A stretch of DNA of 64,000 bases, from positions 186,001-250,000 of the IMG/VR virus record IMGVR_UViG_3300032053_000002; one strand, 5' to 3'. Under the pieces are notes generated by a model. That model was not told where the DNA came from, searched no databases, and was given only the letters and a program-made list of their open reading frames with translations. Below are positions 345 to 22,201 of this stretch, piece by piece; position 1 is the stretch's first letter; every line of letters begins with the position of its first letter. The translations under genes were made by a program, and so were the position numbers.

Positions 345-799
345 TTTTTCAACCCCCTTTTTGCTGAAAGTTTCCCGTTCCCTTCAATGAAATCTTTATT
401 CCATAATGAAGGATTTTTTCTTATTTTAAATTTTTCGCCCGTTTTGGTATCTTTTATGACAATGTTTTCCGGTTCCGTTTTTTCAACTGCCGCGATTGCT
501 TTTTTTACCACATCATCTTTTACTCCATAACGCAACCGTAAAAGATTTTTAACGTTACGAAAAAAATTCTTGATTTTAGTTTTTAGTGAAGGTTTGAGCA
601 TTTCAATTTCAAGATCATTTGGTGTATTTTTCTTCCTCTTCAAAGAACTTGCTGATGCGGGTTTTGATGCGGATATGAACCCGGTTCCCCATTTTTCATC
701 AATATCAAAAATTTCAAAATTCGAATCGAGAGATTCTAGCGCCGATTTCTTTTTCGGTCGCGGTTTTGTTTGTGTGCTAATTTTCTTTTTGGTACTCAT
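341..799 (-). CDS. Basic hypothetical protein
   Basis: Start MSTKKK follows GGGAGG SD; ATGA overlap with the upstream gene. Confidence 0.6.
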   Translation of the reverse strand: MSTKKKISTQTKPRPKKKSALESLDSNFEIFDIDEKWGTGFISASKPASASSLKRKKNTPNDLEIEMLKPSLKTKIKNFFRNVKNLLRLRYGVKDDVVKKAIAAVEKTEPENIVIKDTKTGEKFKIRKNPSLWNKDFIEGNGKLSAKRGLKK

Positions 800-2409: not shown

Positions 2410-2428
2410 AGTTAATTTCTCCAATCAT

Positions 2429-3719: not shown

Positions 3720-5375
3720 TTACTCAATTTCAAAAAATTTATTTTTTATTTCTTCTTTAACTCTTACAAAATCATCATTTTTACCGCGAAGCCACCAGGT
3801 TTTCCAATCATACTTTAGTCTCTCTGTCGCAATCTTGTAATACTCGGGGTCTATTTCAGAACCAATATACGGTCGGTCTAATATTTTACACGCGATTAAA
3901 GTTGTTCCGCTTCCGGTAAAGGGATCATAAACCGTTCCACCATCGGGAGTTGAAAACATTTTTACCAGATAATGCATGAGTTCTGTTGGCTTTACTGTCG
4001 GGTGGTTATTTTTAACTTTTGATATACGATTTAATCCAATATGATTTTGTAGGTATTCTGTTTTACCTTCTTTTTCTGCGTATTGCGCGCCACCACTTCT
4101 CGCCATCAATTTATCATCCAATTTTTCCAATCCCAAGTTTCTTTCAGAAGTGGACGCTTTTGCGGTATAAAAGAAGCGAGATGCTCCACCTTCATCTCCC
4201 AAACCACCCGCGTTATCACCAAGTTTTTTATTATATTTACCGTAAACCAAATCTCCCAGTGCTCCCATGCTTTTTTCTCCTCGTCCCCCAGAAGATTTAC
4301 TTATTCCGCTCTGTTCGTCCAATATCTTTACAGGGCAATCATCTGAACATTGCCAGTCTTCTACTTCTTCCATACCGTTTTCGTCGGCATATCCAATCGG
4401 AGTTCCCAACTCACTTTCGTCGCAACCAGAATATCCGCCGCTATATTGATGACCGTGTTTCCAGTTTCCGCTTTTCGTTCCTGTTATGGCTTTTATTTTT
4501 TTCTTTCCGACCAATTTACACTCTGGAGCGTGACTTAAAACCAGATTGGCGGGAAAACGACCTTTTTCAGAAGCAGATGCGATATCGTTTTTAGTGGGAT
4601 CGAAACCGCAATTTTCGCTAGAAAAAACGCCTTTTTGTCGCGGTTGGCAAGAAGTTGTTTTTGTTTCTTCGTTATGACTTATCCGACTACCATCTATATT
4701 TATTCCAGCGACACCGTGAGTAAGCGCATTATTTACAAAGTTTTTATCAGTTGGTTTCATTCCGATAATAATCGGCTCGTAAGCAGGCTTGAGAGCAGTT
4801 CCCCAACCGTTCCATTTTTTTGCTTCGTCGGTAGCAGGACGTGTTATATCAACCATTCCGTTTTTTAGATGCATTTCTGAAACAAAATCTATGCCACTTT
4901 TTTTATTAGCAGTTCTTCTCTTTTTTCCATCAATAAACGGATTCCTTTGTCCAACAACTTCTCTTTCCGCATTAGCATTTTTATCTATTCCCTTGCTTAT
5001 ATCAAAACTTTTCGGAAATCCGCTTCCGTAAAGCCAGCAAATAGTATCGCGTATTTCAAATCCAACATCTTCCATTGCGGATGCCAATCGGTGTGATGTT
5101 CTCGTTCCACCAAATGCAACAAGAAACCCGCCGGGCTTTAAAACACGATAGGCTTCTTTTACCCATTCTAAATGCCACTTATACATTTTTTGACCGTCAT
5201 TGTCGCCTTCGAGTTGTTTATGCTGCGAATCAAAAGCGGCATTCATGAAATTGAGGAGATATGGTGGATCGGTTATTATGAAGGGAATAGAATTTTCTTC
5301 CATTTTTTGCATTGTCAGCTTGCAGTCTTCGTTATATAGCATATTTTTACTCAAAAAACTTATTTTCCTTTTCAT
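3720..5375 (-). CDS. DNA N6-adenine/N4-cytosine methyltransferase (beta class)
   Basis: DPPY catalytic motif at the N-terminus; HPTVKP and DPFTGSGTT SAM-binding motif at the C-terminus. Confidence 0.9.
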   Translation of the reverse strand: MKRKISFLSKNMLYNEDCKLTMQKMEENSIPFIITDPPYLLNFMNAAFDSQHKQLEGDNDGQKMYKWHLEWVKEAYRVLKPGGFLVAFGGTRTSHRLASAMEDVGFEIRDTICWLYGSGFPKSFDISKGIDKNANAEREVVGQRNPFIDGKKRRTANKKSGIDFVSEMHLKNGMVDITRPATDEAKKWNGWGTALKPAYEPIIIGMKPTDKNFVNNALTHGVAGINIDGSRISHNEETKTTSCQPRQKGVFSSENCGFDPTKNDIASASEKGRFPANLVLSHAPECKLVGKKKIKAITGTKSGNWKHGHQYSGGYSGCDESELGTPIGYADENGMEEVEDWQCSDDCPVKILDEQSGISKSSGGRGEKSMGALGDLVYGKYNKKLGDNAGGLGDEGGASRFFYTAKASTSERNLGLEKLDDKLMARSGGAQYAEKEGKTEYLQNHIGLNRISKVKNNHPTVKPTELMHYLVKMFSTPDGGTVYDPFTGSGTTLIACKILDRPYIGSEIDPEYYKIATERLKYDWKTWWLRGKNDDFVRVKEEIKNKFFEIE

Positions 5376-6219
5376 TTTTTATTTTGTCGCCAGAAACCTC
5401 TAGCTCGCCCTCTTTGCGAAAAATCAGCAAATATTCGTGCACTTTTGAAGTATACCGTTTCGCCGCAACTTTCCCTATTTGATTTGAGGCGAAAGGCGAA
5501 ATGTTTTTAATGATAATCGTGTCCCAATGCAACAAACCTTCGGCGACAAACATCCTAATAATATCTGAATGAAACGAGCGAAACTTTCCATCACTTCTCC
5601 AATCTGCACAAACCCACGCAACGAACCCGCCCGGTTTTAATACTCTTTTTATATTTTTTCCAGTTACCGCCATTTCGGCTAAAAAGTCGCCATATTCTTT
5701 AATGTCGGACAGTTGTCCTTTTACGGATTCGTATTTTTCCAGATCGTGATATGGTGGGCAGGTCATAACTAAATGGGCAAAGTTATCAGGTGTTTCCCCC
5801 ATAAGGCAACCATTACTATTATAGATCGTCGCCTCGATTGAATGCGTCTCCAAATGTTTTTTCACCCGGCCAACCGTCGTTGGCGAGATTTCGTATCCGT
5901 AGTATTTTCTTCCCAACTTTGAGGCGACAAACGCTCTAGTCGCTCTTCCTGCAAACGGGTCTACTATTATTGAATCCACCATTGACCAGTATAAAACTAT
6001 ATTCTCGGCTAATCCGGCGTGAAACTCGCTGAACTCCAAACCCGGTAAATACTTTGCGTCTTCGGAGCGTTTTAACTCTTTTACGGCGTCGTCAAGGTAT
6101 GCGTCTTTCCATTTTGCTTTGGACTGTTTCTCAGGTTCTATTACCGACAAGGGAACAAATCCGAATTGCGAGTTTATCCGTCTTATATCTTCAAACGGAA
6201 GTATTTTTTCGTATCTCAT
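5347..6219 (-). CDS. Second amino-DNA methyltransferase
   Basis: DPFAGRAT motif I followed by TCPPY motif IV. Confidence 0.8.
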   Translation of the reverse strand: MRYEKILPFEDIRRINSQFGFVPLSVIEPEKQSKAKWKDAYLDDAVKELKRSEDAKYLPGLEFSEFHAGLAENIVLYWSMVDSIIVDPFAGRATRAFVASKLGRKYYGYEISPTTVGRVKKHLETHSIEATIYNSNGCLMGETPDNFAHLVMTCPPYHDLEKYESVKGQLSDIKEYGDFLAEMAVTGKNIKRVLKPGGFVAWVCADWRSDGKFRSFHSDIIRMFVAEGLLHWDTIIIKNISPFASNQIGKVAAKRYTSKVHEYLLIFRKEGELEVSGDKIKNEKENKFFE

Positions 6220-7585: not shown

Positions 7586-8374
7586 CTATAACATTTTAAA
7601 CAGTTGACCGAGAACACCCTTTTTATTTCCCGGTGTATGAAAAACCGAAGGGTATGTGTTGTATAATCGGTTTTTTACTTTTTTATTTTTATAGTCGTAT
7701 GTCACATCAAAATAAGTTGTTTTTTCGTCGTCCCACTTTGACATCAGTTGCAAGTTCTGAAAAATTTTATTCTCATAATCCAATTTTATATCATATTCAT
7801 TGGTTATATATAAAAGTTGATAAATAAGTTGATCGTCCTCTCCAGGATACGTTCCTGACATGGATAGCAAACCATTTTCATCTATGGATGGTTTAACCAA
7901 ATCCATGTAATAAGAATTTTTATTCGCCAGTTTTTGTTTTAACACAATTGCGTCATCTATGAATTGGCGAAAATCTTTTACACGCGCTATACAGGCTCCA
8001 GAGTTTAAAAATCTTGACTTATGACCATTTTCTTGAAAATGTTTTGCAATACAGCTTGCAGGATAACAAAAAATTTCCGCTCCAAAAAGTATTTTTGCAT
8101 TTATTTCAAGAAATTTCTTCATAATGTTTTCGCCAGTTTCAAAAATAATGGTGTCTCTAAAATCGAGCATTAAAATAAAATCGTCGCCGTTCAAATTTTT
8201 CAAATGCGACTGAATTATATTTATTTTTGTTGCCAAATCAAATTTTTCAGTTCCCTGACCTATTATCCATAAATCTATTCCGAATTTTTTACAACTTTTC
8301 ATCAAGGAATTGCCGTTGATCCCGTTAAATTTTGTTAGCGGGGTTGTTTCAATCGCGCAGACGTGCAGAGTCAT
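7586..8374 (-). CDS. PLOD/LH3-type glycosyltransferase domain protein (GT-A)
   Basis: ILMLDFRD, ILFGAEIFCYP, FLNSGACI, DDQL, IFQNL and VFHTPG match the PLOD GT-domain motif series. Confidence 0.7.
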   Translation of the reverse strand: MTLHVCAIETTPLTKFNGINGNSLMKSCKKFGIDLWIIGQGTEKFDLATKINIIQSHLKNLNGDDFILMLDFRDTIIFETGENIMKKFLEINAKILFGAEIFCYPASCIAKHFQENGHKSRFLNSGACIARVKDFRQFIDDAIVLKQKLANKNSYYMDLVKPSIDENGLLSMSGTYPGEDDQLIYQLLYITNEYDIKLDYENKIFQNLQLMSKWDDEKTTYFDVTYDYKNKKVKNRLYNTYPSVFHTPGNKKGVLGQLFKML

Positions 8375-11095: not shown

Positions 11096-12532
11096 TCATA
11101 ATTCAAAAAACTTAATAGATTTTTTAGATTCCATTGCAATAGTAGATGTGAATGGTTTAATATAAACTTTAACGTCTTTAATCATTTCACGAAATTTATC
11201 TTTATCCTTTTCCTGAATAAAATAATTTGTGAATCTAGAGTCTGGATTATCCTTGACTCCATGCTGCAATAACCAACGGCGAGTCCATTGCCAGGCAGAA
11301 TTTTCGCTCATTACGTCGCTCGTTTGAGAAATAATGTCTTTTTTATATCCTATCCCATTTAAAATATAATAAATCCAATCGTTTCCGTATTTTGTATCTT
11401 GGATGGTTTTGGAATAAAAAGTTTCATTCATCGCGTTGTGAAGATTTTGTTTAAATTGGGTTTCAAAATCCGCCAATTTCCATTTAAACATTGGTGGAAC
11501 GGTTTTAACTAATTGCTCAAATTCGTCTTTTGTTTTAAAGAAAAATGGGTAATCAACTCCCAAAATTCTTTCCAGAGTTGGGTGACGATATACTATAACT
11601 GGTTTGTTTAATCTAACTCCGTCTTGTGATGATAAATTCCAGGTTGCGTAACCACTGACAAAACAAACTGACGCCAGACTATTCTCTATTAAATATCTAT
11701 ATTGCGAAAATTTTAAGTTTCTGGCGACCAGTTCTTTTGGAGCCCTAATGTCAGTGCACCAGACAATATATTCACCGCTATTCCGAAGATTTTCAGTATA
11801 TTCCATCATCATATCCCAGCCGGTTGATTTATTCCATCGGTGATTGAATACCAGTATTTTTTTATTTGTCGGAAAGTCTGATATCGGTTCAGATGGAGGA
11901 AAATCGTCCGAACTTAACGGCATACATTCAACTTTTTTCATCAAATTATCAATATTTAATCCAACAACCATATCTTTTCTAAAGTTTTTTTCATAATACA
12001 ATGGAGATTGTTCCGTATGAAAAAACGCCTTATCGGCAATATTTATTGCTTCCAGTTGTCGCATAAATGTTGGTGGAACTTGAGAAGAACCGCGAGAAGA
12101 CGGATTATCTACCCAGTGAAAGAATAAAAATCTATCAACGATTTCGCCGTATCTTTTTTCCGACAGAGAAGTCATTATATCCAACATTACTTCTGATTGA
12201 TGGTTAAAAATAAAATCAAAATCTATTTGCCGTAAATCTATATGTTTTCTAAATGCGAGAAAATCATAGTGGGTGCGATTCACCACTGCATTTTTTACAT
12301 ACTCAAAAGGAATATACGTAACGTTTTTTCGTTGGTCGTATCCGTCAAGTTTATTTATTTTCGGAACAATTACGTAGTGATGACAGAACGGCAGAAAATT
12401 AATTGTTTTTTCTAAAACTTTATAGTTTGAATCGGATTGATGCAAAAATGTTCCGTCCGGACTAAATTTTACTGGCGCAGAATAGTGAAGTATTCTCATT
12501 CCGTACAATGGGTGGTCAATATAATTTTCCAT
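11096..12532 (-). CDS. GT-B glycosyltransferase, paralog 1 (possible DNA base glycosyltransferase)
   Basis: ILVFNHRWN motif; aligns by eye over its full length with 19131..20657. Confidence 0.65.
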   Translation of the reverse strand: MENYIDHPLYGMRILHYSAPVKFSPDGTFLHQSDSNYKVLEKTINFLPFCHHYVIVPKINKLDGYDQRKNVTYIPFEYVKNAVVNRTHYDFLAFRKHIDLRQIDFDFIFNHQSEVMLDIMTSLSEKRYGEIVDRFLFFHWVDNPSSRGSSQVPPTFMRQLEAINIADKAFFHTEQSPLYYEKNFRKDMVVGLNIDNLMKKVECMPLSSDDFPPSEPISDFPTNKKILVFNHRWNKSTGWDMMMEYTENLRNSGEYIVWCTDIRAPKELVARNLKFSQYRYLIENSLASVCFVSGYATWNLSSQDGVRLNKPVIVYRHPTLERILGVDYPFFFKTKDEFEQLVKTVPPMFKWKLADFETQFKQNLHNAMNETFYSKTIQDTKYGNDWIYYILNGIGYKKDIISQTSDVMSENSAWQWTRRWLLQHGVKDNPDSRFTNYFIQEKDKDKFREMIKDVKVYIKPFTSTIAMESKKSIKFFEL

Positions 12533-12534
12533 AA

Positions 12535-12930
12535 TTATTTTGCCCACATGCCACTTTTAACAACTCTTGCAATTTTAGAATAAACTGCTAAATCGCGATA
12601 ACTATCTTCTACAGATTCATTATTTGCTTCCAATGTTTCTTTTATCAGAATAATATTAAACAATCTTTGCATCTTGTCATTGCATCGAAACCAAATCCCT
12701 TCTAAACTCACCATTATTTCCTTTATTGTTTTTAATTGGGTTCCGACCGCAATATTCCCAGTTCCATAATCGCTTTGTTTTTTACAGAACACAATATACT
12801 CTTCTAAAAGATAATGCTTGAAAGACGATGTTGTTTGCGGATAGTTTTTTTCCATTGTTTGTATTACTTCAATGTCTTTTTCAGACAATTCTGTTAATAA
12901 ATTTAATTCGTATTTTTTTTCTTCGCCCAT
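12535..12930 (-). CDS. DUF1599 / nucleotide-modification-associated domain 1 protein
   Basis: KQSDYG, RCNDKMQRL and ESVEDSYRDLAVY motifs. Confidence 0.8.
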   Translation of the reverse strand: MGEEKKYELNLLTELSEKDIEVIQTMEKNYPQTTSSFKHYLLEEYIVFCKKQSDYGTGNIAVGTQLKTIKEIMVSLEGIWFRCNDKMQRLFNIILIKETLEANNESVEDSYRDLAVYSKIARVVKSGMWAK

Positions 12931-12931
12931 A

Positions 12932-13471
12932 TTAACTCCTAGTTTTTAATAAATTTTTTATTTCTTCTTCAGTCTTTGCATACATTTTACATATTTTTAT
13001 GAGACTCTCTTTTAAAACGTCGGCAGAGAAAAATATCATTAAATAGTCGGTCGCATCTCGTTTTGATATCTGATAGTGATGCGCGATTAATTCTAATAAC
13101 TCATTGTTAAATCTTTTTTCTTTTTTTCCTTTGACGTATTTTAAAAATGTTCTGCCCTTTGGAATTATATTCCCATAGATTTTATACAACGCCTCAGGCG
13201 AAACATCATAACTTATTTTTTGAATCATGCTTACGATAGATAGCCAATCGGGGTTCATTGACAGATACCTATTTATCATATATGTAGAAAATGTTTTCCT
13301 GTCAGATTCCGATAAATTATCAAAATATTCCTTATCGTACTTATGTTCCGTAATATATTTGAGATGGTCGAAAAGAGTTATGGATTTTATTTTTTCGGCT
13401 TCATCTTTCGCCTTTTCAATAGGAAATTCTATCGGCAAATCCTCTACGATAAAAAAATCTCTATTCTTCAT
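12932..13471 (-). CDS. Clamp loader small subunit (gp62-like)
   Basis: FSTYMINRYLSM motif; position beside the clamp loader. Confidence 0.6.
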   Translation of the reverse strand: MKNRDFFIVEDLPIEFPIEKAKDEAEKIKSITLFDHLKYITEHKYDKEYFDNLSESDRKTFSTYMINRYLSMNPDWLSIVSMIQKISYDVSPEALYKIYGNIIPKGRTFLKYVKGKKEKRFNNELLELIAHHYQISKRDATDYLMIFFSADVLKESLIKICKMYAKTEEEIKNLLKTRS

Positions 13472-13733
13472 CTATTAAATTTCCGCCAAATTCTTTTGGA
13501 ACCGCTCCGCAATTTGTGCAGGAAAAAACTTGAACGGGAACAACCGCTTCTTTTCCAACCGGCGACTGTAACGCACTTACTTTTTTAATTATGTAGAAAA
13601 CTTGAAAAAGATTGTGCCCACACTGGCATTTAAATGTGGTTAGATCTTTAACATTTACATTTAATCTTAATTGTTCATTCGCACCCATTGACGGGTCATC
13701 TCCACCCGGAGTGAAAATCATTTTGTCGGCCAT
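13461..13733 (-). CDS. Zinc-binding hypothetical protein
   Basis: CQCG and CTNCG pairs. Confidence 0.55.
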   Translation of the reverse strand: MADKMIFTPGGDDPSMGANEQLRLNVNVKDLTTFKCQCGHNLFQVFYIIKKVSALQSPVGKEAVVPVQVFSCTNCGAVPKEFGGNLIDEE

Positions 13734-13747
13734 TTTTATTCTCCTTA

Positions 13748-14044
13748 CTATTTATTATTTTCGCCAATCGCAGTTCCTTGTGACATATTATTCGATATTA
13801 AAGGAATCGATCCGATTGGAACGTATTGTTTCAATTTATTATGCAATAATTCATAAACTTCTTCTGGTATTGATAAGTTGTATACTACAGGTGTCATATA
13901 CTCTCGAACATCAATGCCATTTCTCACCGCGATATAAAAATCCATTTTGCAATCCATTTTTTGCTCTTCGCTCTTCAAAACCGCCTCTTTGGATATTCGT
14001 ATCGGGATTAAATAAAAATTTAACATATTACTCTCCAAATTCAT
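13748..14044 (-). CDS. Hypothetical protein
   Basis: ORF in operon context only. Confidence 0.45.
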   Translation of the reverse strand: MNLESNMLNFYLIPIRISKEAVLKSEEQKMDCKMDFYIAVRNGIDVREYMTPVVYNLSIPEEVYELLHNKLKQYVPIGSIPLISNNMSQGTAIGENNK

Positions 14045-14954
14045 TTATTAGTGTTATTAACGTGCCCATAAAACAAATTTCTTTGTCTACGCTCATGAAA
14101 TCATTTTGAATGCCATTGGCGAGTATTAAAATAGAATTCGCAACATTATTTGGAGCAAACTCGTCAATCTTATCATACAGAAATCTATAAACTTCGATGA
14201 AATCGTTTATATGATTATCCGCAACCAATTGCCTTACACTTCTAAATATGTCTTTCTTGTTTTTTCCTTTTAAAATCTCTAGAAGTTTAAGTCTAAAATC
14301 CGACTCAATTATTTGCGCTCTATCAACTTTTAATTCACCGTTCATACAATTCATTTGCGCAGAATTTATTAATTGTCTTATATCAGGATATGTTGCGTCA
14401 ACCAATACCTTAATGTCCGCTACATCAAATTTTATATTTTCCGCCTTCAATATATTTCCCAATCGTACTGCAACATCCTTTCTCGTTGGCGGCACAATTT
14501 GATAAATCTGGCATCTTGAAATTATCGGATCGATTATTTTTTCATGGTAATTCGCGGTTAAAATAAATCTAGTTGTTCGCGAAAAAGTTTCCATTAAATT
14601 TCTCAATGCCGCTTGCCCGGAAGGGGAAATAAAATCGCACTCATCCAAAATAATTATTTTAAGCGACTTGAACCCCACACTCGATGCGAATCCCTTAATT
14701 TTATTTCTAACGGTTTCGACCGAGTTTTCATCCGACGCATTAACATACATTACGTCAGATACAGTGTTTTCCGCGATAATTTTCGCCAGTGAAGTTTTCC
14801 CAGTTCCCTGTTTGCCATAAAAAAGTAAATGCGGTGGATCGTTTTCCTTAATATATTGCGCAACTTTTTTCTTCACGTGGTCGTTTCCGACATATTCTTC
14901 CAGATTTGTTGGTCTATATTTTTCAACCCAGATTGTGTGTTCTTTTTTTATCAT
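14028..14954 (-). CDS. gp44: Clamp loader AAA+ subunit (RFC/gp44-like)
   Basis: WVEKYRP, GKQGTGKT Walker A, LDECD Walker B, SRC motif. Confidence 0.95.
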   Translation of the reverse strand: MIKKEHTIWVEKYRPTNLEEYVGNDHVKKKVAQYIKENDPPHLLFYGKQGTGKTSLAKIIAENTVSDVMYVNASDENSVETVRNKIKGFASSVGFKSLKIIILDECDFISPSGQAALRNLMETFSRTTRFILTANYHEKIIDPIISRCQIYQIVPPTRKDVAVRLGNILKAENIKFDVADIKVLVDATYPDIRQLINSAQMNCMNGELKVDRAQIIESDFRLKLLEILKGKNKKDIFRSVRQLVADNHINDFIEVYRFLYDKIDEFAPNNVANSILILANGIQNDFMSVDKEICFMGTLITLINEFGE

Positions 14955-14965
14955 GTGCGTATTCC

Positions 14966-15721
14966 TTAATTGGAAAAGTCAGTATCAGCTTCAACAATAT
15001 AATACTTGGCGGTATAATTGTCGCCTTCGAAGGCGACAAACCCTAATCCTTCAGAACTAATCTTAAAAACCGCTTTTTTAGCACCTTTGTTAGCGGAAAA
15101 AATTTCTTTAATATAATCCGCGTTATATGATATTGTTTTGTCTACTGAATTTATTTCATTGACTTTGACATCCAAAAATGCTCGATTGGTATTTATCGAT
15201 GAATATCCCAATACGAGTTTATATTCCCCGTCTCGATTTTTCAAAAGCGTCGCGATCTTGGTTTCGGAAAAAACACCTTTTACTTTAATGTAGTCGTTCA
15301 TAAACTCTTTCGTTAAACCGATTTCCAAATCATATGGCGGTTCATCCTTTAACCCCTTTGGTTTTGGAATAACCAATAAATCAGACAACATATAATTTAA
15401 TTGCTGTTTTTTATCTCTCATTTGCACAGACACGTATTTTTCTTCTCCACTCTCATTAATATTTTGCAAATCGAGTTCGAATTCGTCGTCCATCAAAGAC
15501 AAAAATTTTGAAAGTAGGCCGGAATTCAATATTCCTATTTTAGTATCTATCCCAGTAAATCCGGCCTTATTCACGACAACTTCTCCCATGAGAGATTTAT
15601 CTTCAGTAATTATTTTCGTGCTCAACGTGTCTTCTGAAATATCCCACGCAGCTGCCTCAACCGTTCCGCTTAGATAATATTTTTCAATAAAATCAAGCAA
15701 ATATGACTTCTTCATTTTCAT
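14966..15721 (-). CDS. gp45: Sliding clamp (gp45/PCNA-like)
   Basis: Size, beta-rich acidic pattern, position between polymerase and clamp loader. Confidence 0.78.
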   Translation of the reverse strand: MKMKKSYLLDFIEKYYLSGTVEAAAWDISEDTLSTKIITEDKSLMGEVVVNKAGFTGIDTKIGILNSGLLSKFLSLMDDEFELDLQNINESGEEKYVSVQMRDKKQQLNYMLSDLLVIPKPKGLKDEPPYDLEIGLTKEFMNDYIKVKGVFSETKIATLLKNRDGEYKLVLGYSSINTNRAFLDVKVNEINSVDKTISYNADYIKEIFSANKGAKKAVFKISSEGLGFVAFEGDNYTAKYYIVEADTDFSN

Positions 15722-15743
15722 AATCTTACTCCTTTTATGTTAG

Positions 15744-18281
15744 TTAAAAATCAAAATATTTATTTATCGCACTTCTTTGAAATGTCGGCATTTCCCAATT
15801 AACCGCTTTATAACAATCTTCTATTTTTGACTTTAAAATTCGCTCAAAGATTTTTTCTCTGTCTATGTATTTTCTCGCGAATTCCAAAACTTCTATTGGG
15901 TCGTCATATCCTCGAATGGCGAGTCCATCCATACCGAATTCATTTTCTTTTAAATACATCCAACGTATTTTTTCGCCAGATTTTATTGGAGAAAATTTAT
16001 TACGTAACTTGTAATAATCCAACAATTCATTGTGACTAACCGCCGCCTTAACATGAGCGGGAGTAGCTTTAATCCAATTTCCAAATGTCTTATTATTTGT
16101 TTTTTTATAGGTTTCAAATTTTGATACATTTTTTACAGAAGTTGGAACCGCAATTTCTTCTATTTTCACATTTTTGATCATCTCTTTAAAATCCAAAACT
16201 TTTTTATCAATTATATCTCGGTCAATATTTTTTAACATATCGCTGAGAAGTATAGTTAAAAAGTTTTTGAACGCGTTTGGAAAATTGGAACGAACAACAT
16301 CCAATCCTTTATAGTCTATTTCATCGGTTATTACGCCCTTGTCATAAATAACCCACAGCGCATATCTTTTTTTAGTTATCCATATTCCGCTCTTCGCGAT
16401 TATTTCTCTTTTTACGTCAAACCTATGAGAATCAACATTTAAAAAGTTTTTTCCAAACAACTTGAAAGAATTATTCAAAAAATCTTGAACCTGTATTGTT
16501 ATTTTAGAAATATGTTCCGTCATCTGCACGTCATCATTGGTGTCCACTTCCGGATATATTTTTTCTATTAATGGTTTTGCTGGGCAAAAAATAGAATCGG
16601 TGTCCATATAAATCACGTAATCTTTATGGCTTTCCATAATTTTGTTGTAATAATGATTTGTCATTAACTCCGTATATTTTATTAGACTAACTCCCGTTGT
16701 GGTGACCGCTTCTGCATTGGCGAGATCATAAAATCTAAAACTTGGCAGTCCCAAAACACCGTAAACAGAATTTAACATAACCTTTGCAATGGTTCTTCGT
16801 CTTTTATAGTATCGTGATTTTTCCTTGTCGCCTTTATTTCCATATTCTTTCATTAACGAGTCATAAATATTTTTATCCTTATTCCATTCTTCTAATATTT
16901 TTGGAATGATACCGATTTTGTCTTTTCTATAAACTACACCGTTAGAAGATATACAAAATCCATATTTTTCTAAAGTTTCTTGAAGTTCGTCGCCAGTAAA
17001 TTGATAATCTTTACCTAGCATATTTGCCGTGTATGAAACGGACTTATCTTTTAGATGAACAGAAGAGTCCCAATTTTCAACTTTTCCAACTTTAGTTTCT
17101 GGCGAAATATTTAATGTCAATACAATTGATGGGTATAGAGAAGTAAAATCTAGATCGTAAATCCATTCATATTTAGCAGTTTCCGGAGATTTTACGTACG
17201 CACCAGAAAATCTTACGTCGGTATCACTCATCAACTTTCTATTTTCTGGATTTTTATTTGGAGCGACCAACTTATGATGCTTCATATAAGTCAATATCGC
17301 ACCCTCTATCCACCGACTAGAATAAAATATATCTTCATACGGAACGTGACCTTTGTGGCAAATACCCTGAACTAAATCTATGAAATTTAATTTTTGATCT
17401 AGTTTAACCACTAATTTTGTGTCCACCAGAGAATATTCAATAAACTTGTTTATATCGTCTTTTCTCAGTTTACCAAAGTTTCCATCGTATTTTACTTTCC
17501 CTTCTCCTAATTCGAGGCGAGAAATAAAATCCAAACTATACGATGAACGTTCTTTATACGCATAATTTCTATACAGTGGGAGATAATCCAGACACGACAC
17601 CCCCGCAATAAAATATCTTCTTCGGTTTTCGTTATAAAAAATAATCCCAATGGGACTTAATTTTCTTGCATAATTTTCGCCCAACACTTTTAACAGACGA
17701 TGATATAAATATGGAACATCAAAATTATCTATGTTCCACCCAGTAATAATCGTCGGGTGAATCTCTTCCCACTTTTGCAGAAATGCTAATAAAAGGTCTT
17801 CTTCGTTAGCAAATGAAATAATTTCTTCGTTTTCACGACGATATTGTTGTATTGTATTTTCATCGTCCAAAACATAAACAAAATAATCATCGGAGATCTG
17901 GTCGTATATGGAAATGGCGGTGATTTTATTTTCCGCTTTTCTAATGTCGGGTAGACTAAATTCGGTTTCTACTTCAATATCAAAAAATAAAATTCGATGG
18001 CCGGTGGAAATATCATCACTTTCATAATATAAATCAACTAAAATTCTAGTTTCAGACGACACATCCGATTCAAATATCTTTCCCTTTTCCGCATCCCACT
18101 TTGTCCACGAGTGTACCTTACTAACTTTTTGTCCGTAGATTGTTTCGTAATCACCGACGTCGCCCAATTTATATGCATAATTGATAAAATCAAACTGTTT
18201 ATAACCCAATTTGTCATCCCAAATATGCGCTATACTTTTTCCGAATGTCGGTGTTCTTTGAATAAAAATGTTTTGATAAAT
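15744..18281 (-). CDS. gp43: Family B DNA polymerase, probable ATT start
   Basis: Exonuclease DIE motif, DFTSLYPS, KVMLNSVYG, YMDTDS; frame stays open upstream to ATT at 18281 (MYQNIF), 9 nt after AGGAGG. Confidence 0.95.
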   Translation of the reverse strand: MYQNIFIQRTPTFGKSIAHIWDDKLGYKQFDFINYAYKLGDVGDYETIYGQKVSKVHSWTKWDAEKGKIFESDVSSETRILVDLYYESDDISTGHRILFFDIEVETEFSLPDIRKAENKITAISIYDQISDDYFVYVLDDENTIQQYRRENEEIISFANEEDLLLAFLQKWEEIHPTIITGWNIDNFDVPYLYHRLLKVLGENYARKLSPIGIIFYNENRRRYFIAGVSCLDYLPLYRNYAYKERSSYSLDFISRLELGEGKVKYDGNFGKLRKDDINKFIEYSLVDTKLVVKLDQKLNFIDLVQGICHKGHVPYEDIFYSSRWIEGAILTYMKHHKLVAPNKNPENRKLMSDTDVRFSGAYVKSPETAKYEWIYDLDFTSLYPSIVLTLNISPETKVGKVENWDSSVHLKDKSVSYTANMLGKDYQFTGDELQETLEKYGFCISSNGVVYRKDKIGIIPKILEEWNKDKNIYDSLMKEYGNKGDKEKSRYYKRRRTIAKVMLNSVYGVLGLPSFRFYDLANAEAVTTTGVSLIKYTELMTNHYYNKIMESHKDYVIYMDTDSIFCPAKPLIEKIYPEVDTNDDVQMTEHISKITIQVQDFLNNSFKLFGKNFLNVDSHRFDVKREIIAKSGIWITKKRYALWVIYDKGVITDEIDYKGLDVVRSNFPNAFKNFLTILLSDMLKNIDRDIIDKKVLDFKEMIKNVKIEEIAVPTSVKNVSKFETYKKTNNKTFGNWIKATPAHVKAAVSHNELLDYYKLRNKFSPIKSGEKIRWMYLKENEFGMDGLAIRGYDDPIEVLEFARKYIDREKIFERILKSKIEDCYKAVNWEMPTFQRSAINKYFDF

Positions 18282-18294
18282 TTTTAGTATCCTC

Positions 18295-18879
18295 CTATTT
18301 TTTTAATTTACAATTATCTAAGTGCCATCTATATAAATTCTGGATTGTCATTTTCTTGTGACAATGGAGACATTCTCCCAATTTATTATGTTTGCCTTTA
18401 TTTGATTCTGAAATTTTCTTTTTATGTGTATTTGACTTTGGCGCTTTTAACCATTCATAAGAATATTTTCCGTTTTTATGACTTCTCTTTAGCCAATCCG
18501 AAAAAGTTGGTCTGGCCTGTCCCCTACATTTACTCGGTTTTCCTTTTAATGCGTCCGATTTTCGCTTAAGCCATTGTATATATTTTGTTTTTGTATATCC
18601 CATTCGCGTATTTCCACCATCCCCACCTTCAGATATATTATAACCCAATTTTATTGTATTTAATTTTTTTATCCAAAATATTTCACGCTTATTTAAATTT
18701 GCAATAGAATTACAAGATTCAACTATTTCTTTTTTGAAATTTTCTATACCATATTTTTTAATGGCTTTTTTCAGATATATCCCAGACCCCAAATATTCAG
18801 AACTTTTTTCTTCCGACGATTTACATTTTCCAATATATACTTTTCCATTTATTAAATTGGTGGTTTTATAGATATACAC
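18295..18879 (-). mobile_element. Free-standing GIY-YIG homing endonuclease with NUMOD-like basic tail
   Basis: YIYKTTNLINGKVYIG, YLGSG, REIFWI, GYNISEGG. Confidence 0.88.
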
Positions 18880-18934
18880 AATTCTCCTATTACGAAATAC
18901 ACATTAGGATTCCGCCCCCCCCGTTTTTAGATTT

Positions 18935-18950
18935 TCTTTATGCATAAAGA
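18935..18950. promoter_or_regulatory. 16-bp perfect palindrome, possible operator
   Basis: TCTTTATGCATAAAGA in the leader of the endonuclease/polymerase operon. Confidence 0.35.
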
Positions 18951-18991
18951 TTAAATCAAGTTAAAAGATTTAAGTTAAAACCATTATTCAT

Positions 18992-19020
18992 ATTATACTA
19001 AACTATTTAATAAAAGTTCC
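18992..19020 (-). promoter_or_regulatory. Putative middle promoter GGAACT-N17-TATAAT
   Basis: Same elements and spacing recur at 21702, 37146 and 57730. Confidence 0.7.
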
Positions 19021-19126
19021 ATTTTTTCTTTTTTTTATTGTCGCGAATCATCCATATTATAGCGATAATCGCGATTATCGCCATCAAATAGCCAATACCG
19101 GCAATAATTGCCCAAAGATTTTCCAT
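19007..19126 (-). CDS. 39-aa single-pass membrane protein (below the ORF-track cutoff)
   Basis: GGAG SD, then MENLWAIIAGIGYLMAIIAIIAIIWMIRDNKKKKKWNFY. Confidence 0.55.
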   Translation of the reverse strand: MENLWAIIAGIGYLMAIIAIIAIIWMIRDNKKKKKWNFY

Positions 19127-19130
19127 ATGA

Positions 19131-20657
19131 TTACTCCGTTTCAAACATATTTTTCTTAGATATTTTTATAAACTTCGGATCTTTTTTTGCTTCGCTACAA
19201 AACTTTTTGTTTTTCCATTCTGGGTCGTCTAATAATTTTTGTACTTCTTCTTTCCTATCATCTCGAATTTCCAAACGAGTGTCCGAATCAAATGGGTCGT
19301 CAACCGCACCCATCATTATAACCCATCTCCTCAGATGCTCCCACGAATTAGACAAGTGAAGGTCTCGATGTGTATTATAGAGAATATTTCTCTTATATCC
19401 GTTTCCGTTTATAATATGTTGTAACCATTCTCTTCCGTATAATCGTTGCCCACCGTCACTGTACTCGCGATCATCACCCAGACTATGCGGTTCTTTTTTT
19501 CTTGCATCTTCATAATTTTTTATACACTCCGTCATCGAAGAAAGTAAATTATTTTTAAACACTTCTTCGTGCGATGGTGAAGGTAATTTCCATTTATTTT
19601 TATCGGGCGACATTTCGAGTAATGATAAAAAATCACTTTTCGTTTTAAAGTACTGAGTATAATTGTCGCCCAAAACGTATTTCATAATTGGATGCTCATA
19701 AACCAATGACCTCGCGCCCAATTCTATTCCGTCCTGAACCGACAAGTTCCATGTAGCATAATCGTCCACAAATGTCAATGTCGCAAAACAATTTTCTATC
19801 AAATACCGATATTCTCCACGGCTTGGAAGCGATTCTACCCTCATCCAGTTCGGAGCGGCTTCACCGGCAGTTGGGTGTAGAGCATTTTTATCCGTTACCC
19901 AAATCAGATATTCGTCCCTGGATAAATCTTTCGTGTATTCTATTAAACGTTTAATTCCCGTGGAATTATTCCAGCGGTGATTGAAAACTAAGATATTTTT
20001 CTTTGGTAACGAAATTGGTTTGGATGGCGGGAACGGGTCTGGCGACAGAGGCATATAAGTGATTTTCTTTTTTATTTCAGTGTCGATTATCTCTCCGGCA
20101 ATTCTCGATCTTTTCCAGTTGTCTTTTAAATAATTTATGGAAACATCACTGTGTATAAATGTCTTCGCAGATAAATCTATCGCTTCAATCTGTCGCCAAA
20201 ATCCATCCGTATATGTTTCGGACGGCTTTGACTTTGGGGAGTCTATCCAGTGAAAAAACAGAAATGTATCTACTGATGTTCCATATCTTCTCGATAACAT
20301 CCCGCTCATAATATTATAAAATAGTTCTGGTTGATGTAGAAAAATAAAATCAATGTCGTATCTTCGCCAGTCGAAAAAACTGGCCAGCGCGGAATATTCA
20401 AAATATCCCCGATTCGCTAAAACCGAAATCGGGTATGGAAAAGGCACCCACGTAACATTTTTCCTAATGTAGTCGCCTCCAATTTCGTTTAATTCAGGAA
20501 CCAGAATAAAATGGTGGCAATCAGGTAAGAAGTTTACGGTTTTCCATAAAACTTTGAAATTGGAATCCGCGTGATGTTGCCAGACGTTTCCACTCCATCT
20601 AACAGGCGACATACAATGTAAAACTCTTCTACCGTATAATATACTTTTTTTATCCAT
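19131..20657 (-). CDS. GT-B glycosyltransferase, paralog 2
   Basis: ILVFNHRWNNSTG; full-length similarity to 11096..12532. Confidence 0.65.
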   Translation of the reverse strand: MDKKSILYGRRVLHCMSPVRWSGNVWQHHADSNFKVLWKTVNFLPDCHHFILVPELNEIGGDYIRKNVTWVPFPYPISVLANRGYFEYSALASFFDWRRYDIDFIFLHQPELFYNIMSGMLSRRYGTSVDTFLFFHWIDSPKSKPSETYTDGFWRQIEAIDLSAKTFIHSDVSINYLKDNWKRSRIAGEIIDTEIKKKITYMPLSPDPFPPSKPISLPKKNILVFNHRWNNSTGIKRLIEYTKDLSRDEYLIWVTDKNALHPTAGEAAPNWMRVESLPSRGEYRYLIENCFATLTFVDDYATWNLSVQDGIELGARSLVYEHPIMKYVLGDNYTQYFKTKSDFLSLLEMSPDKNKWKLPSPSHEEVFKNNLLSSMTECIKNYEDARKKEPHSLGDDREYSDGGQRLYGREWLQHIINGNGYKRNILYNTHRDLHLSNSWEHLRRWVIMMGAVDDPFDSDTRLEIRDDRKEEVQKLLDDPEWKNKKFCSEAKKDPKFIKISKKNMFETE

Positions 20658-20660
20658 AAA

Positions 20661-21662
20661 TTATATTTCCTTGTATAAATTTTGTATCCAATTTTCTGCG
20701 AAAAACTTCTCTAAAATGTTTTGTTGCTTTAAAACTATTTCATTCTTTTTATCAGTATTCGCCGTATAATAATTTATTTTTTCTATTAAGTCGCCCATCG
20801 AATCGTATCGTAACTCGTCAATAACATATTCTTTATATGCGGTTGTATTATTATTAGGCACGAAATAACAGAGACCACTCACCATACCCTCAATTACCGC
20901 ATATCCGAAATTATCATAATCCGATAAAGATAATCCGAATCCGCAAGTATAAAGAAATTGCTTGTACTGACCATCACTTATTTCTGGATTATACCTAACA
21001 TCAAACTCCTCTTTAAATTTTTCCGGAAATGAAGAGAACGGTTGAAATGGGCAAGTAATCACCATTCTATTTTTTATTTCTTTTGGTAACTCAAATAATT
21101 TTTGCGGATTCTTTTCTTTAACAAGACGATGATTAAATAAAATGATATTAGAATTCCTCGGACTTAATTTTTTTTCAAAAATTGGTAAACCCATTGCGAT
21201 TGTTTCATATGGTAATAAATCGGAAAACCATTTCGTCGCAACAAAAACTTTTGTCGCCAATTCAGCGACAACTTTTTCATATTCCCTCAATTTTTTAGAA
21301 TTTCCCGGTTCGTATTTTGAAAAATTGGAACCGTGAACTATACCGTATATTTGTTCAGCAAACCCCGCTTTAATTATGTCGGGAGTAAAATCTTCTATCA
21401 AATTAGCGAAAAATACTTTCTTAATTTCCCTATCTCTCATTTCTTTAATAATTGTCGCCAAAAGTTTATGCTGTTCCGTTCTCCCTGGTAAATACGTATC
21501 TTCTCTAAACGGGGATGGCGACACAAATACTTTTGATAAAAATACGTTTAAATCACGAGACCACTTTACGTTGTAAAGATGCGGAACGAAAATAATATCT
21601 TTCCGTTTATACTTTTCCGCAAAAGAAAATTGGTCATCTTCTGATTCGAATGTTTTACTCAT
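20661..21662 (-). CDS. GT-B glycosyltransferase, divergent paralog 3
   Basis: IILFNHRL motif and DNFGYAVIEGM (E-x7-E-like) motif. Confidence 0.62.
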   Translation of the reverse strand: MSKTFESEDDQFSFAEKYKRKDIIFVPHLYNVKWSRDLNVFLSKVFVSPSPFREDTYLPGRTEQHKLLATIIKEMRDREIKKVFFANLIEDFTPDIIKAGFAEQIYGIVHGSNFSKYEPGNSKKLREYEKVVAELATKVFVATKWFSDLLPYETIAMGLPIFEKKLSPRNSNIILFNHRLVKEKNPQKLFELPKEIKNRMVITCPFQPFSSFPEKFKEEFDVRYNPEISDGQYKQFLYTCGFGLSLSDYDNFGYAVIEGMVSGLCYFVPNNNTTAYKEYVIDELRYDSMGDLIEKINYYTANTDKKNEIVLKQQNILEKFFAENWIQNLYKEI

Positions 21663-21701
21663 AGATTATATTGTCGTAATGATTAATAAATAACTTTAAA
21701 T

Positions 21702-21730
21702 ATTATACTACACGGAAAATAAAAAGTTCC
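21702..21730 (-). promoter_or_regulatory. Putative middle promoter GGAACT-N17-TATAAT
   Basis: Intergenic, directly upstream of the glycosyltransferase pair. Confidence 0.7.
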
Positions 21731-22201
21731 CTAAATTCCTGTTGAGCCGAATCCGCCATCTCCGCGAGAAGTATCCGATAATTCATCTACTACCTGTATC
21801 TCGGGAGTTATTACCGGACAAACCACCAATTGCGCGATTTTTTGACCTTTTTTTATTTCTACCGCATGATAATTGACATTATACAGTATCACACAAATTT
21901 CTCCCCGATAAAGATAGTCCACGGTTCCCGGTGTATTCAATATAGTCAACCCCTTTAATGCCAACCCGCTTTTTGGACGAACTTGCGCTTCCCAGATTAT
22001 TTTAACTTTTGGATATGCGGGAATGTTGATACTTATTGGCGGTGGCAACTCAATGGCCATTCCAGTATGAATAAGTTCCTGTGATTTTGAAACCAACCAA
22101 AAATCTTTATCAACCGAATATAAATCCAACCCGGAATCAGTATCATGCGCTCGTATTGGTATAATCGCGTCTTCTCGTAGTTTTTTAATTTTTAATATCA
22201 T
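21731..22201 (-). CDS. dut: Trimeric dUTPase
   Basis: SGLDL, RPKSG, GTVD..YRGE, RGDGGFGSTG. Confidence 0.95.
   Translation of the reverse strand: MILKIKKLREDAIIPIRAHDTDSGLDLYSVDKDFWLVSKSQELIHTGMAIELPPPISINIPAYPKVKIIWEAQVRPKSGLALKGLTILNTPGTVDYLYRGEICVILYNVNYHAVEIKKGQKIAQLVVCPVITPEIQVVDELSDTSRGDGGFGSTGI

What the first reader, a model, noticed from the sequence alone, without database searches (positions are those of the whole stretch)
11096..21730. Candidate DNA hypermodification module: three paralogous GT-B enzymes plus DUF1599 inside the replisome operons
Seen: 11096..12532 and 19131..20657 align end to end (YG.R.LH, DSN.KVL.KT.NFLP.CHH, FLFFHW.D, MPLS.D.FPPS.PIS, ILVFNHRWN), and 20661..21662 shares ILFNHR. 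Paralog 1 is two bases downstream of DUF1599 in the clamp-loader operon. Paralogs 2 and 3 sit between dUTPase and PolB behind a GGAACT promoter. Established: T4 alpha- and beta-glucosyltransferases are GT-B enzymes acting on hmC-DNA, and DUF1599 is associated with nucleotide-modification loci. Inference: sequential or context-specific glycosylation of a modified base. No hydroxymethylase or TET gene is in this window.
Basis: partly seen in the sequence, partly recalled or inferred. Interest (0 to 1): 0.7.

Follow-up and report, generated by a model that had tools for sequence, protein, structure and literature searches.

The report
Clamp-tethered glycosyltransferases in a phage replisome
Two old paralogous sugar-transferring enzymes sit among the DNA-replication genes of an uncultured 293-kb phage and end in the same short tail that its DNA polymerase uses to hold the sliding clamp, so they probably add sugars to newly made phage DNA, although the genome has no known way of making a base that accepts sugar.

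Summary
ORFs 11096-12532 and 19131-20657 are true paralogs: 40% identity end to end, E 8e-122. The third ORF, 20661-21662, is only a remote GT4-type relative.

An AlphaFold model of the 508-aa paralog (pLDDT 90.6) is a GT-B/GT4-like fold (Z 21) followed by a winged-helix domain.

The new finding is the extreme C-terminus. It carries a di-aromatic motif (..NKFF and variants) in 98 of 119 family members. The same motif ends this phage's PolB and both of its N6/N4 DNA methyltransferases, and it changes together with the PolB tail across phage lineages. A complex model puts the tail in the PIP-type pocket of the phage clamp (score 0.61, best control 0.00).

In 167 viral contigs the family lies beside PolB, the clamp or the clamp loader. 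It has no Pfam or PHROG family and no hit in 50,697 deposited phage genomes.

Best reading: clamp-tethered, co-replicative DNA glycosyltransferases, functionally like T4 alpha-GT, which binds gp45.

Weakness: the 91%-complete genome has no ThyA-like hydroxymethylase or hydroxylase, TET/JBP, C5-methylase or DpdA, so the acceptor is unknown. A 20-kb sugar-tailoring cluster with more glycosyltransferases lies next door, which keeps a non-DNA glycan target possible.

The parts
11096..12532 (-). P0001, 478 aa. Clade-A member of the new family: GT-B catalytic region, winged-helix-like C-terminal region, and a tail ending ..SKKSIKFFEL.
   Evidence: 40% identical to P0002. 65% identical to its positional ortholog in L001. 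Falls in clade A of the tree. No Pfam or PHROG hit.
11099..11140 (-). P0001 residues 465-478: the putative clamp-interacting tail (F475, F476).
   Evidence: In the complex model these residues contact clamp residues 38-45, 121-128, 224-226 and 241-246. The K[FY]F C-terminal motif is enriched in this proteome: 7 observed against 0.97 expected.
12535..12930 (-). 131-aa divergent DUF1599-like protein directly upstream of P0001. Function unknown.
   Evidence: phrog_1485, E 1.8e-11. 46% identical to an ortholog that carries PF07659. No direct PF07659 hit.
19131..20657 (-). P0002, 508 aa. Clade-B member of the family.
   Evidence: AF2 model with pLDDT 90.6. Fold searches. 129 homologs, none with a functional name.
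19503..20657 (-). P0002 residues 1-385: GT-B (GT4-like) two-Rossmann catalytic region.
   Evidence: VIA Z 21.4 to 6kih, 20.5 to BshA, 19.8 to PglA, 16.3 to the phage HY126 glycosyltransferase (9iqz), 14.1 to T4 AGT. D309 aligns with the GT4 Glu of P0003.
19218..19451 (-). P0002 residues 403-480: winged-helix domain.
   Evidence: Separate model with pLDDT 80. Nearly all top-50 hits in both searches are winged-helix DNA binders, but Z is at most 7.2.
19134..19217 (-). P0002 residues 481-508: basic linker and degenerate tail (..KISKKNMFETE). Orthologs end in ..KNKFF.
   Evidence: net charge +5.
20661..21662 (-). P0003, 333 aa. A more canonical GT4-type glycosyltransferase, 3 bases upstream of P0002. 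It has neither winged helix nor tail.
   Evidence: Pfam Glycos_transf_1, E 1.2e-5, 25.4 bits; 27.4 bits with neighbouring stretches in the frame. Ortholog in L001 is 41% identical. Only 7 homologs found.
21702..21730 (-). Promoter-like GGAACT-N17-TATAAT upstream of P0003/P0002.
18992..19020 (-). Second copy of the promoter-like motif, upstream of the homing endonuclease and PolB.
15744..18209 (-). Family-B DNA polymerase. Its C-terminus ..SAINKYFDF is the reference clamp-binding tail.
   Evidence: Pfam and PHROG hits. Tail. The RB69 gp43 C-terminal tail binds gp45 (PMC3012046).
14966..15721 (-). Sliding clamp, 251 aa, gp45/PCNA-like.
   Evidence: Lies between PolB and gp44. Atlas feature hits to gp45-slide_C and PCNA clusters, 0.94-0.95. 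Its L003 ortholog (34% identical) hits PCNA_C at E 0.0019. Folds as a trimer with pLDDT 89.
14028..14954 (-). Clamp loader large subunit (gp44-like).
12932..13471 (-). Clamp loader small subunit (gp62-like).
21731..22201 (-). dUTPase, upstream neighbour of the P0003/P0002 unit.
18295..18879 (-). GIY-YIG homing endonuclease between P0002 and PolB. The relative L001 has an NTP_transferase at this position.
3720..5375 (-). N6/N4 DNA methyltransferase, 551 aa, ending ..KNKFFEIE (same tail).
5347..6219 (-). N6/N4 DNA methyltransferase, 290 aa, ending ..ENKFFE (same tail).
7586..8374 (-). GT-A type glycosyltransferase (GT_PLOD). In relative L001 it lies in the same operon as the P0003 and P0002 orthologs.
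796..2424 (-). GT1 glycosyltransferase, 542 aa. It is the first gene of the adjacent sugar cluster, which continues upstream of the window.

Best explanation
P0001 and P0002 are the two anciently duplicated members of a previously unnamed phage enzyme family. Each has three parts: a GT-B (GT4-like) nucleotide-sugar glycosyltransferase region, a winged-helix domain, and a flexible basic linker ending in a di-aromatic clamp-interacting motif of the same kind as the PolB C-terminal tail.

Proposed mechanism (inferred): the tail docks in the PIP-type pocket of the phage sliding clamp. The enzyme then rides on, or is recruited to, clamps left on newly replicated DNA. From there it transfers a sugar from an NDP-sugar to a base of the nascent phage DNA, alongside two DNA methyltransferases tethered the same way. 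This would protect the genome from host nucleases.

The two paralogs would differ in sugar, linkage or sequence context, like T4 alpha- and beta-GT. P0003 is co-transcribed with P0002 but has no tail. It is a separate GT4 enzyme that may extend the sugar or serve another substrate.

Shown: the paralogy, the fold, tail conservation and its co-variation with PolB, and synteny. Inferred: clamp binding (supported only by a model), catalysis, DNA as acceptor, and the biological role. Unknown: the acceptor atom.
For: - Paralogy: 40% identity, E 8e-122. The tree has two clades, and every two-copy genome contributes one member to each.
- Fold: GT-B, Z 21.4. Donor-site D309 aligns with the GT4 Glu.
- C-terminal domain: winged helix.
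- Tail conservation: 98 of 119 full-length homologs have a di-aromatic pair in the last 8 residues, against 40 of 422 ORFs of this genome.
- Tail sharing: the same motif ends PolB and both DNA methyltransferases. K[FY]F at the C-terminus occurs in 7 ORFs against 0.97 expected, P 7e-5.
- Co-variation across lineages. PolB ..EN[SA]WF goes with GTs ..DDSWF..EVSWF and ..EESWF in all 8 such distinct loci, and in both paralog clades. PolB ..INKFFEL goes with ..NKFF and ..NKFFDLE.
- Complex model (clamp trimer plus P0001 residues 440-478): score 0.61, best of 3 controls 0.00. That mark was reached by 58 of 80 solved complexes and 2 of 110 mismatched pairs. The runs agree in at least 60% of contacts and the partner's pLDDT is at least 50. 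My own alignment was used and the job is unlike the calibration, so those counts hold only roughly. Contacts lie in the interdomain-loop and C-terminal-strand pocket.
- Synteny: 167 IMG/VR contigs carry the family. Of 73 loci, PolB is within 10 kb in 48, the clamp in 47 and gp44 in 46. Copies sit directly before PolB (24), directly after the clamp (20), or between gp44 and gp62.
- A distant tail-less member sits in the PrimPol/DnaB-SSB replication module of an unrelated phage.
- Precedent: T4 alpha-GT binds gp45 (PMC13216743). The gp43 C-terminal tail binds gp45 (PMC3012046).
Against: - No enzyme known to create a sugar-accepting base was found. PF00303, PF02511, PF12851, PF00145, PF13640 and PF01702 are all absent from the 91%-complete genome. 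PF00303 is also absent from 14 relatives' contigs.
- A large sugar-tailoring cluster with further GT1, GT2 and GT-A enzymes adjoins the module. Such clusters can serve virion or cell-surface glycans.
- Fold matches to true DNA glycosyltransferases (Z 14-16) are weaker than to generic GT4 enzymes.
- Winged-helix Z scores (at most 7.2) are at the tool's background level. The P0002 domain is net acidic.
- P0002's own tail is degenerate (..NMFETE).
- Clamp binding rests on a structure model and sequence logic only.
- The first Glu of EX7E is not conserved.
Confidence: 0.55

Rival explanations
1. The enzymes glycosylate something other than DNA. Candidates are a replisome or virion protein, or a glycan or lipid intermediate built from the products of the neighbouring 20-kb sugar cluster. 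Their place among replication genes would then reflect only shared early or middle expression.
For: - The adjacent cluster holds at least 5 SDR epimerase/dehydratases, an aminotransferase, a B12-radical SAM enzyme, FkbM methyltransferases, a GT2, two GT1 and a GT_PLOD.
- The best fold matches are small-molecule, lipid or glycan GT4 enzymes.
- No acceptor-base pathway was found.
- The best named viral structural matches are actinophage 'glycosyltransferases' of unknown target.
Against: This does not explain four observations. The tail is shared only with PolB and the DNA methyltransferases and co-varies with the PolB tail. There is a winged-helix domain. Genes sit between the clamp and clamp loader in many lineages that have no sugar cluster nearby. 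The other glycosyltransferases of the genome lack the tail.
Confidence: 0.22
2. The proteins are clamp- and DNA-associated but not catalytic. A GT-B scaffold would have been recruited as a replication or late-transcription accessory factor, or as a nucleotide-sugar sensor, much as T4 gp33 and gp55 use C-terminal tails to bind gp45.
For: - The first Glu of the EX7E motif is not conserved, and there is no Pfam GT1 hit for P0001 or P0002.
- A winged helix plus a clamp tail resembles a clamp-dependent regulator.
- T4 late-transcription proteins bind the clamp through their tails (PMC2988020, title and abstract listed; the detail is from my own knowledge).
Against: About 27 invariant residues cluster in GT-B active-site positions: H48, H49, H136, H169, H227-R228-W229, W303-N304, Q308-D309. 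The ribose-binding acidic residue is retained. In the close relative the gene is operonic with an NTP_transferase and two other glycosyltransferases.
Confidence: 0.1
3. The shared C-terminal ..K-F-F tail is not a clamp-binding motif. It would be a degradation or sorting tag, for instance recognised by the ClpP-like protease encoded in the same module. It would then say nothing about DNA targeting.
For: - A ClpP-like protease gene (10433-11074) is conserved next to the module. A paralog elsewhere in the genome is followed by a 175-aa ORF ending in KNKFFA.
- Three of the seven ORFs with the tail have no obvious link to DNA.
Against: The PolB C-terminal tail is the established clamp-binding element in T4-type phages. 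The complex model places F475 and F476 in the canonical clamp pocket, with all controls at 0.00.
Confidence: 0.05

Closest known systems
T4 alpha-glucosyltransferase (AGT; Pfam PF11440, CAZy GT72)
   Same: A GT-B fold enzyme encoded by a T4-type phage. It is reported to bind the gp45 sliding clamp (PMC13216743). It occurs as one of a pair of DNA glycosyltransferases in one genome.
   Different: No sequence-family match. Structural similarity is lower (Z 14.1) than to generic GT4 enzymes. AGT has no winged-helix domain (my own knowledge). Its acceptor, 5-hmC, is made by a ThyA-like enzyme that this genome lacks.
DNA arabinosyltransferases of the 5-hydroxycytosine pathway (phage HY126 glycosyltransferase, PDB 9iqz/9ir0; RB69, DLP3)
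   Same: GT-B enzymes, described in PMC13326640 as part of a pathway that arabinosylates phage DNA. The HY126 structure is among the fold matches (Foldseek E 3.9e-9, Z 16.3).
   Different: That pathway needs a ThyA homolog making 5hodCMP and UDP-arabinose genes. Neither a ThyA homolog nor an NTP_transferase is present here. Those enzymes are about 366 aa, with no matching C-terminal region.
TET/JBP-associated phage DNA glycosyltransferases (Burke 2021, PMC8256090; Pyle 2024, cited within PMC13229309)
   Same: Metagenomic phage glycosyltransferases that decorate DNA with diverse glycans, and that neighbour DNA methyltransferases.
   Different: They depend on a C5-methyltransferase plus a TET/5mYOX dioxygenase. 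Both are absent here. The methyltransferases here are the N6/N4 type.
GT4 retaining glycosyltransferases (BshA, PglA, PimA, sucrose-phosphate synthase, SenB)
   Same: The best structural matches (Z 19-21), with a conserved donor-site acidic residue.
   Different: No Pfam GT1 or GT4 hit for P0001 or P0002. These enzymes have no winged helix or clamp tail, and they are not encoded in replisome operons.
PIP-box clamp clients (RB69/T4 gp43 C-terminal tail; eukaryotic DNMT1-PCNA, from my own knowledge)
   Same: A C-terminal hydrophobic/aromatic peptide predicted to bind the interdomain pocket of a trimeric clamp. A DNA-modifying enzyme is recruited to the clamp.
   Different: The motif is ..(N)K-aromatic-aromatic and lacks the canonical Qxxhxxaa spacing in most clients. 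Binding has not been measured.

Membership tests
GT-B fold / GT4-like glycosyltransferases | Two Rossmann-like domains with an interdomain cleft | tested here: met
   P0002 model, pLDDT 90.6. Z 21.4 to 6kih over 346 residues, and many GT4 matches at Z above 18.
GT-B fold / GT4-like glycosyltransferases | Sequence-profile match (Pfam PF00534 Glycos_transf_1 or relatives) | tested here: not met
   P0001 and P0002 have no GT Pfam or PHROG hit at E up to 1. P0003 is borderline: 25.4 bits against a 26.4 cut-off, and 27.4 bits with neighbouring stretches.
GT-B fold / GT4-like glycosyltransferases | EX7E-type donor-binding motif in the C-terminal domain | tested here: inconclusive
   The second acidic residue is kept: invariant D309 aligns with E258 of P0003. 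The first Glu position is not conserved.
T4 alpha-glucosyltransferase (PF11440) | Profile match to the AGT family | tested here: not met
   No match in the genome at E up to 1.
T4 alpha-glucosyltransferase (PF11440) | 5-hmC supplied by a dCMP hydroxymethylase (ThyA homolog) | tested here: not met
   PF00303 is absent from the genome and from 14 relatives' contigs.
T4 alpha-glucosyltransferase (PF11440) | Interaction with the sliding clamp | tested here: inconclusive
   In silico only. Score 0.61 against a best control of 0.00; the mark was reached by 58 of 80 solved complexes and 2 of 110 mismatched pairs; runs agree in at least 60% of contacts; partner pLDDT at least 50.
T4 beta-glucosyltransferase (PF09198) | Profile match to the BGT family | tested here: not met
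   No match at E up to 1.
TET/JBP-linked DNA glycosylation systems | Co-encoded TET/JBP (5mYOX) dioxygenase and C5-cytosine methyltransferase | tested here: not met
   PF12851 and PF00145 are absent.
Sliding-clamp clients (PIP-like C-terminal tail) | Terminal hydrophobic/aromatic motif shared with the cognate polymerase | tested here: met
   Tails of PolB, P0001 and two methyltransferases. 98 of 119 homologs carry it. It co-varies with the PolB tail.
Sliding-clamp clients (PIP-like C-terminal tail) | Physical binding to the clamp pocket | not testable with these tools
   Only the model is available. Pull-down, ITC or a structure is needed.
DUF1599 (PF07659) | Profile match to PF07659 | tested here: inconclusive
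   No direct hit. A 46%-identical ortholog carries it. Atlas feature score 0.94 to PF07659 clusters.
DNA glycosyltransferase (any family) | Sugar transfer to a base in DNA; glycosylated nucleosides in virion DNA | not testable with these tools
   No isolate exists. Only assembled sediment metagenome contigs are available.

The most novel reading that the evidence does not exclude
These enzymes define a new route of phage DNA hypermodification that needs no ThyA-type or TET-type hydroxylating step. A clamp-tethered GT-B enzyme would glycosylate a canonical base, an N-methylated base or another DNA position directly on nascent DNA. The sugars might be the unusual deoxy-amino or branched sugars made by the neighbouring 20-kb cluster. 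The system would be widespread in uncultured marine and sediment T4-like phages.
Probability: 0.2. Interest if true: 0.9.

Novelty: new variant of a known kind. Interest (0 to 1): 0.72.

Why it matters
DNA glycosylation is one of the strongest anti-restriction and anti-CRISPR shields phages have. It is known from only a handful of cultured lineages, mostly starting from a hydroxylated pyrimidine.

This family extends that picture in two ways.
- It is a sequence-distinct enzyme family: 345 clusters at 50% identity, 167 IMG/VR contigs, and no cultured representative. Its architecture (GT-B, winged helix, clamp tail) makes the clamp-coupled modification proposed for T4 alpha-GT directly testable with a short peptide and a clamp.
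- The phages carrying it show no known acceptor-forming enzyme, so a chemically new modification is a real possibility.

The same tail on two DNA methyltransferases suggests that this phage lineage recruits its whole DNA-modifying machinery to the clamp. The enzymes could also serve as tools for labelling DNA.

Tried and rejected
- Sequence searches of P0001/P0002 against Pfam, PHROGs and PDB sequences gave nothing meaningful.
- tblastn of P0002, P0003 and two distant members (P0283, P0304) against 50,697 deposited phage genomes found no match. A megablast of the region also found none.
- Genome-wide searches for ThyA/hydroxymethylase, ThyX, TET/JBP, C5-MTase, NTP_transferase, 2OG-FeII_Oxy_3, TGT/DpdA, AGT and BGT were all negative. 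The positive control PF00534 worked.
- I hoped the other ORFs with the tail would be gp33/gp55-like clamp clients. They are an NT5C nucleotidase, a DUF5661 protein and an unknown protein, so they give no extra validation.
- Charge and pI analysis did not mark the proteins as DNA binders. The P0002 winged helix has net charge -3.
- The unknown 231-aa ORF 22185-22880 next to dUTPase gave no Pfam, PHROG or Atlas lead.
- P0004 against PDB sequences gave nothing.
- Context look-ups of distant members P0282, P0268 and P0331 landed on contigs too short to help.
- Cluster look-up gave no names.
- Sequencing runs hold the region only as assembled sediment-metagenome contigs, so no read-level signal of modification could be sought, and read laying was not used.
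- Literature searches found no description of this family or of a glycosyltransferase clamp tail in such phages.

Full report
**Setting.** The window is bases 186001-250000 of a 292,723-bp linear IMG/VR virus record, estimated 91% complete and 35% G+C. Nearly all genes are on the minus strand. The replication module reads, in the direction of transcription:
- gp32 (36206-37084), a split UvsX/RecA, a 5'-3' exonuclease, a DnaB helicase, a class II RNR (23451-26069), dUTPase (21731-22201);
- P0003 (20661-21662), P0002 (19131-20657), a GIY-YIG homing endonuclease;
- PolB (15744-18209), a 251-aa clamp (14966-15721), gp44- and gp62-like clamp loader subunits;
- a DUF1599-like ORF (12535-12930), P0001 (11096-12532), a ClpP-like protease, a PD-(D/E)XK nuclease.

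The nearest cultured PolB is that of Microcystis phage Mel-JY01, at 44% identity. The DNA comes from sediment metagenomes.

**Checking the observation.**
- P0003 is different. It matches only about 100 residues around IILFNHR (23% identity, E 8e-4; profile-profile probability 84.6%).
- P0003 scores at the Pfam Glycos_transf_1 threshold. It has only seven homologs in the 5.8-billion-protein search and homologs in 4 of 73 related loci.
- So there are two paralogs plus one remote superfamily relative.
- The 'DUF1599' ORF has no direct PF07659 hit, but it is 46% identical to an ortholog that carries PF07659.
- The GGAACT-N17-TATAAT element upstream of P0003 is real and recurrent: 5 copies against 0.23 expected.

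**What the proteins are.** An AlphaFold2 model of P0002, built on 41 homologs, is confident (pLDDT 90.6).
- Residues 1-385 are a GT-B fold closest to GT4 retaining transferases: Z 21.4 to sucrose-phosphate synthase, 20.5 to BshA, 19.8 to PglA.
- The solved glycosyltransferase of phage HY126 (9iqz), whose DNA carries arabinosylated 5-hydroxycytosine, scores 16.3. T4 AGT, solved in complex with DNA (1y6f), scores 14.1.
- Invariant residues sit where GT4 enzymes bind donor and acceptor. D309 aligns with the conserved Glu of P0003's GT4 motif.
- Residues 403-480, modelled separately (pLDDT 80), have winged-helix topology. Nearly all top-50 hits in both structure searches are winged-helix DNA binders, although Z is at most 7.2, which is the tool's background level.
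- The domain is not basic in P0002, so I treat it as suggestive only.

**The tail.** The family's C-termini are variable linkers that nearly always end in a di-aromatic pair: NKFF, NKWW, DSWF, HGFF, EFFT, HTWF.
- 98 of 119 full-length homologs have such a pair in the last eight residues, against 40 of 422 ORFs of this genome. Most exceptions end in LF, MF or FM.
- In this genome the same ending..NK[FY]F, closes PolB (..SAINKYFDF), P0001 (..SIKFFEL) and both N6/N4 DNA methyltransferases (..KNKFFEIE and ..ENKFFE). K[FY]F at a C-terminus occurs 7 times against 0.97 expected.
- In T4-type phages the polymerase's C-terminal tail is the PIP-type peptide that binds gp45 (PMC3012046).
- The tails co-vary across lineages. 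Where PolB ends ..EN[SA]WF, the glycosyltransferases end ..DDSWF..EVSWF or ..EESWF. This holds in all 8 such distinct loci and in both paralog clades. Where PolB ends ..INKFFEL they end ..NKFF or ..NKFFDLE, and so on. The match is looser among the FF, FW and WF variants.

**Complex model.** I modelled the clamp trimer with P0001 residues 440-478.
- The score is 0.61, with the best of three controls at 0.00. That mark was reached by 58 of 80 solved complexes and 2 of 110 mismatched pairs.
- The runs agree in at least 60% of their contacts and the partner's pLDDT is at least 50.
- My own alignment was used and the job is unlike the calibration, so the counts hold only roughly.
- F475 and F476 contact clamp residues 38-45, 121-128, 224-226 and 241-246. 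These are the interdomain loop and C-terminal strand pocket used by PIP peptides.
- Because clamp-peptide complexes have been solved, this shows likeness and does not prove binding.

**Context elsewhere.**
- The family has 345 clusters at 50% identity in 1.84 billion representatives and 167 IMG/VR contigs.
- It has no functional name and no member in deposited phage genomes.
- Of 73 loci, 48 have PolB, 47 the clamp and 46 gp44 within 10 kb.
- Copies sit directly before PolB (24), directly after the clamp (20), between DUF1599 and PD-(D/E)XK (5), or between gp44 and gp62.
- A tree splits the family into two clades. Every two-copy genome has one member in each, so the duplication is old and both copies were kept.
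- In the close relative L001 the operon is dUTPase, a 114-aa ORF, GT_PLOD, the P0003 ortholog, the P0002 ortholog, NTP_transferase, PolB. That is three glycosyltransferases plus a sugar-activating enzyme inside the replisome block.
- Distant members keep the GT-B region and winged helix but lose the tail. One lies in a PrimPol/DnaB-SSB replication module of a different kind of phage.

**What argues against DNA.**
- The genome has no ThyA-like enzyme, ThyX, TET/JBP, C5-methyltransferase, 2OG-FeII_Oxy_3 or DpdA. Fourteen relatives' contigs lack ThyA homologs. No known acceptor-forming step is visible.
- The 20 kb just upstream of the window is a sugar-tailoring cluster: SDR dehydratases and epimerases, a DegT aminotransferase, a B12-radical SAM enzyme, FkbM methyltransferases, a split TPP enzyme, a GT2 and two GT1. 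GT_PLOD lies nearby. Such clusters can serve virion or surface glycans.
- None of those other glycosyltransferases has the tail.

**Verdict.** I give about 0.55 to clamp-tethered DNA glycosyltransferases that work like T4 alpha-GT (which binds gp45, PMC13216743) while belonging to a different, unnamed family. The acceptor chemistry is unresolved. 'Three paralogs acting in sequence' is not supported.

Noticed in passing
genome 166001-186000 (L010) and window 796-2424: A roughly 20-kb nucleotide-sugar tailoring cluster. It holds at least five SDR epimerase/dehydratases (two like GDP-mannose 4,6-dehydratase), a DegT aminotransferase, a B12-binding radical SAM enzyme, FkbM methyltransferases, a split TPP E1/transketolase-like enzyme, a GT2 and two GT1. 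The genome has no NTP_transferase.
   Followed up: partly
window 3720-5375 and 5347-6219: Two adjacent N6/N4 DNA methyltransferases both end in the PolB-like ..NKFF tail. This suggests clamp-tethered methylation. A methyltransferase in relative L041 ends ..KKFFEWK.
   Followed up: partly
window 33963-36130: The UvsX/RecA gene is split into an N-terminal part (35390-36130) and a C-terminal part (33963-34853). A 143-aa ORF (34856-35287) of unknown kind lies between them, possibly a mobile insertion.
   Followed up: partly
window 18295-18879: A GIY-YIG homing endonuclease lies between P0002 and PolB, exactly where the close relative L001 has an NTP_transferase gene.
   Followed up: no
window 10433-11074; genome 47460-48624: A ClpP-like protease is conserved inside the replication module of many relatives. 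A second paralog elsewhere in the genome is followed by a 175-aa unknown ORF ending in KNKFFA.
   Followed up: no
window 2429-2932, 21731-22201; genome 113396-114073: dCMP deaminase, dUTPase and an NT5C-type deoxynucleotidase are present, but no thymidylate synthase of either type.
   Followed up: partly
window 18992-19020, 21702-21730, 32092-32121, 37146-37174, 57730-57758: A recurrent promoter-like element, GGAACT-N17/18-TATAAT, is found on the coding strand only. There are 5 copies against 0.23 expected.
   Followed up: partly
L094-L097 (GTDB MAG contigs): Four short contigs binned into Flavobacteriales (3) and Ignavibacteria (1) MAGs are phage fragments with clamp-GT or gp44-GT-gp62 gene order. 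This is a weak hint at Bacteroidota-type hosts.
   Followed up: partly
window 6216-6662: A Macro-domain protein (phrog_335) lies between the methyltransferases and GT_PLOD. It could be an ADP-ribose-removing counter-defence enzyme.
   Followed up: no
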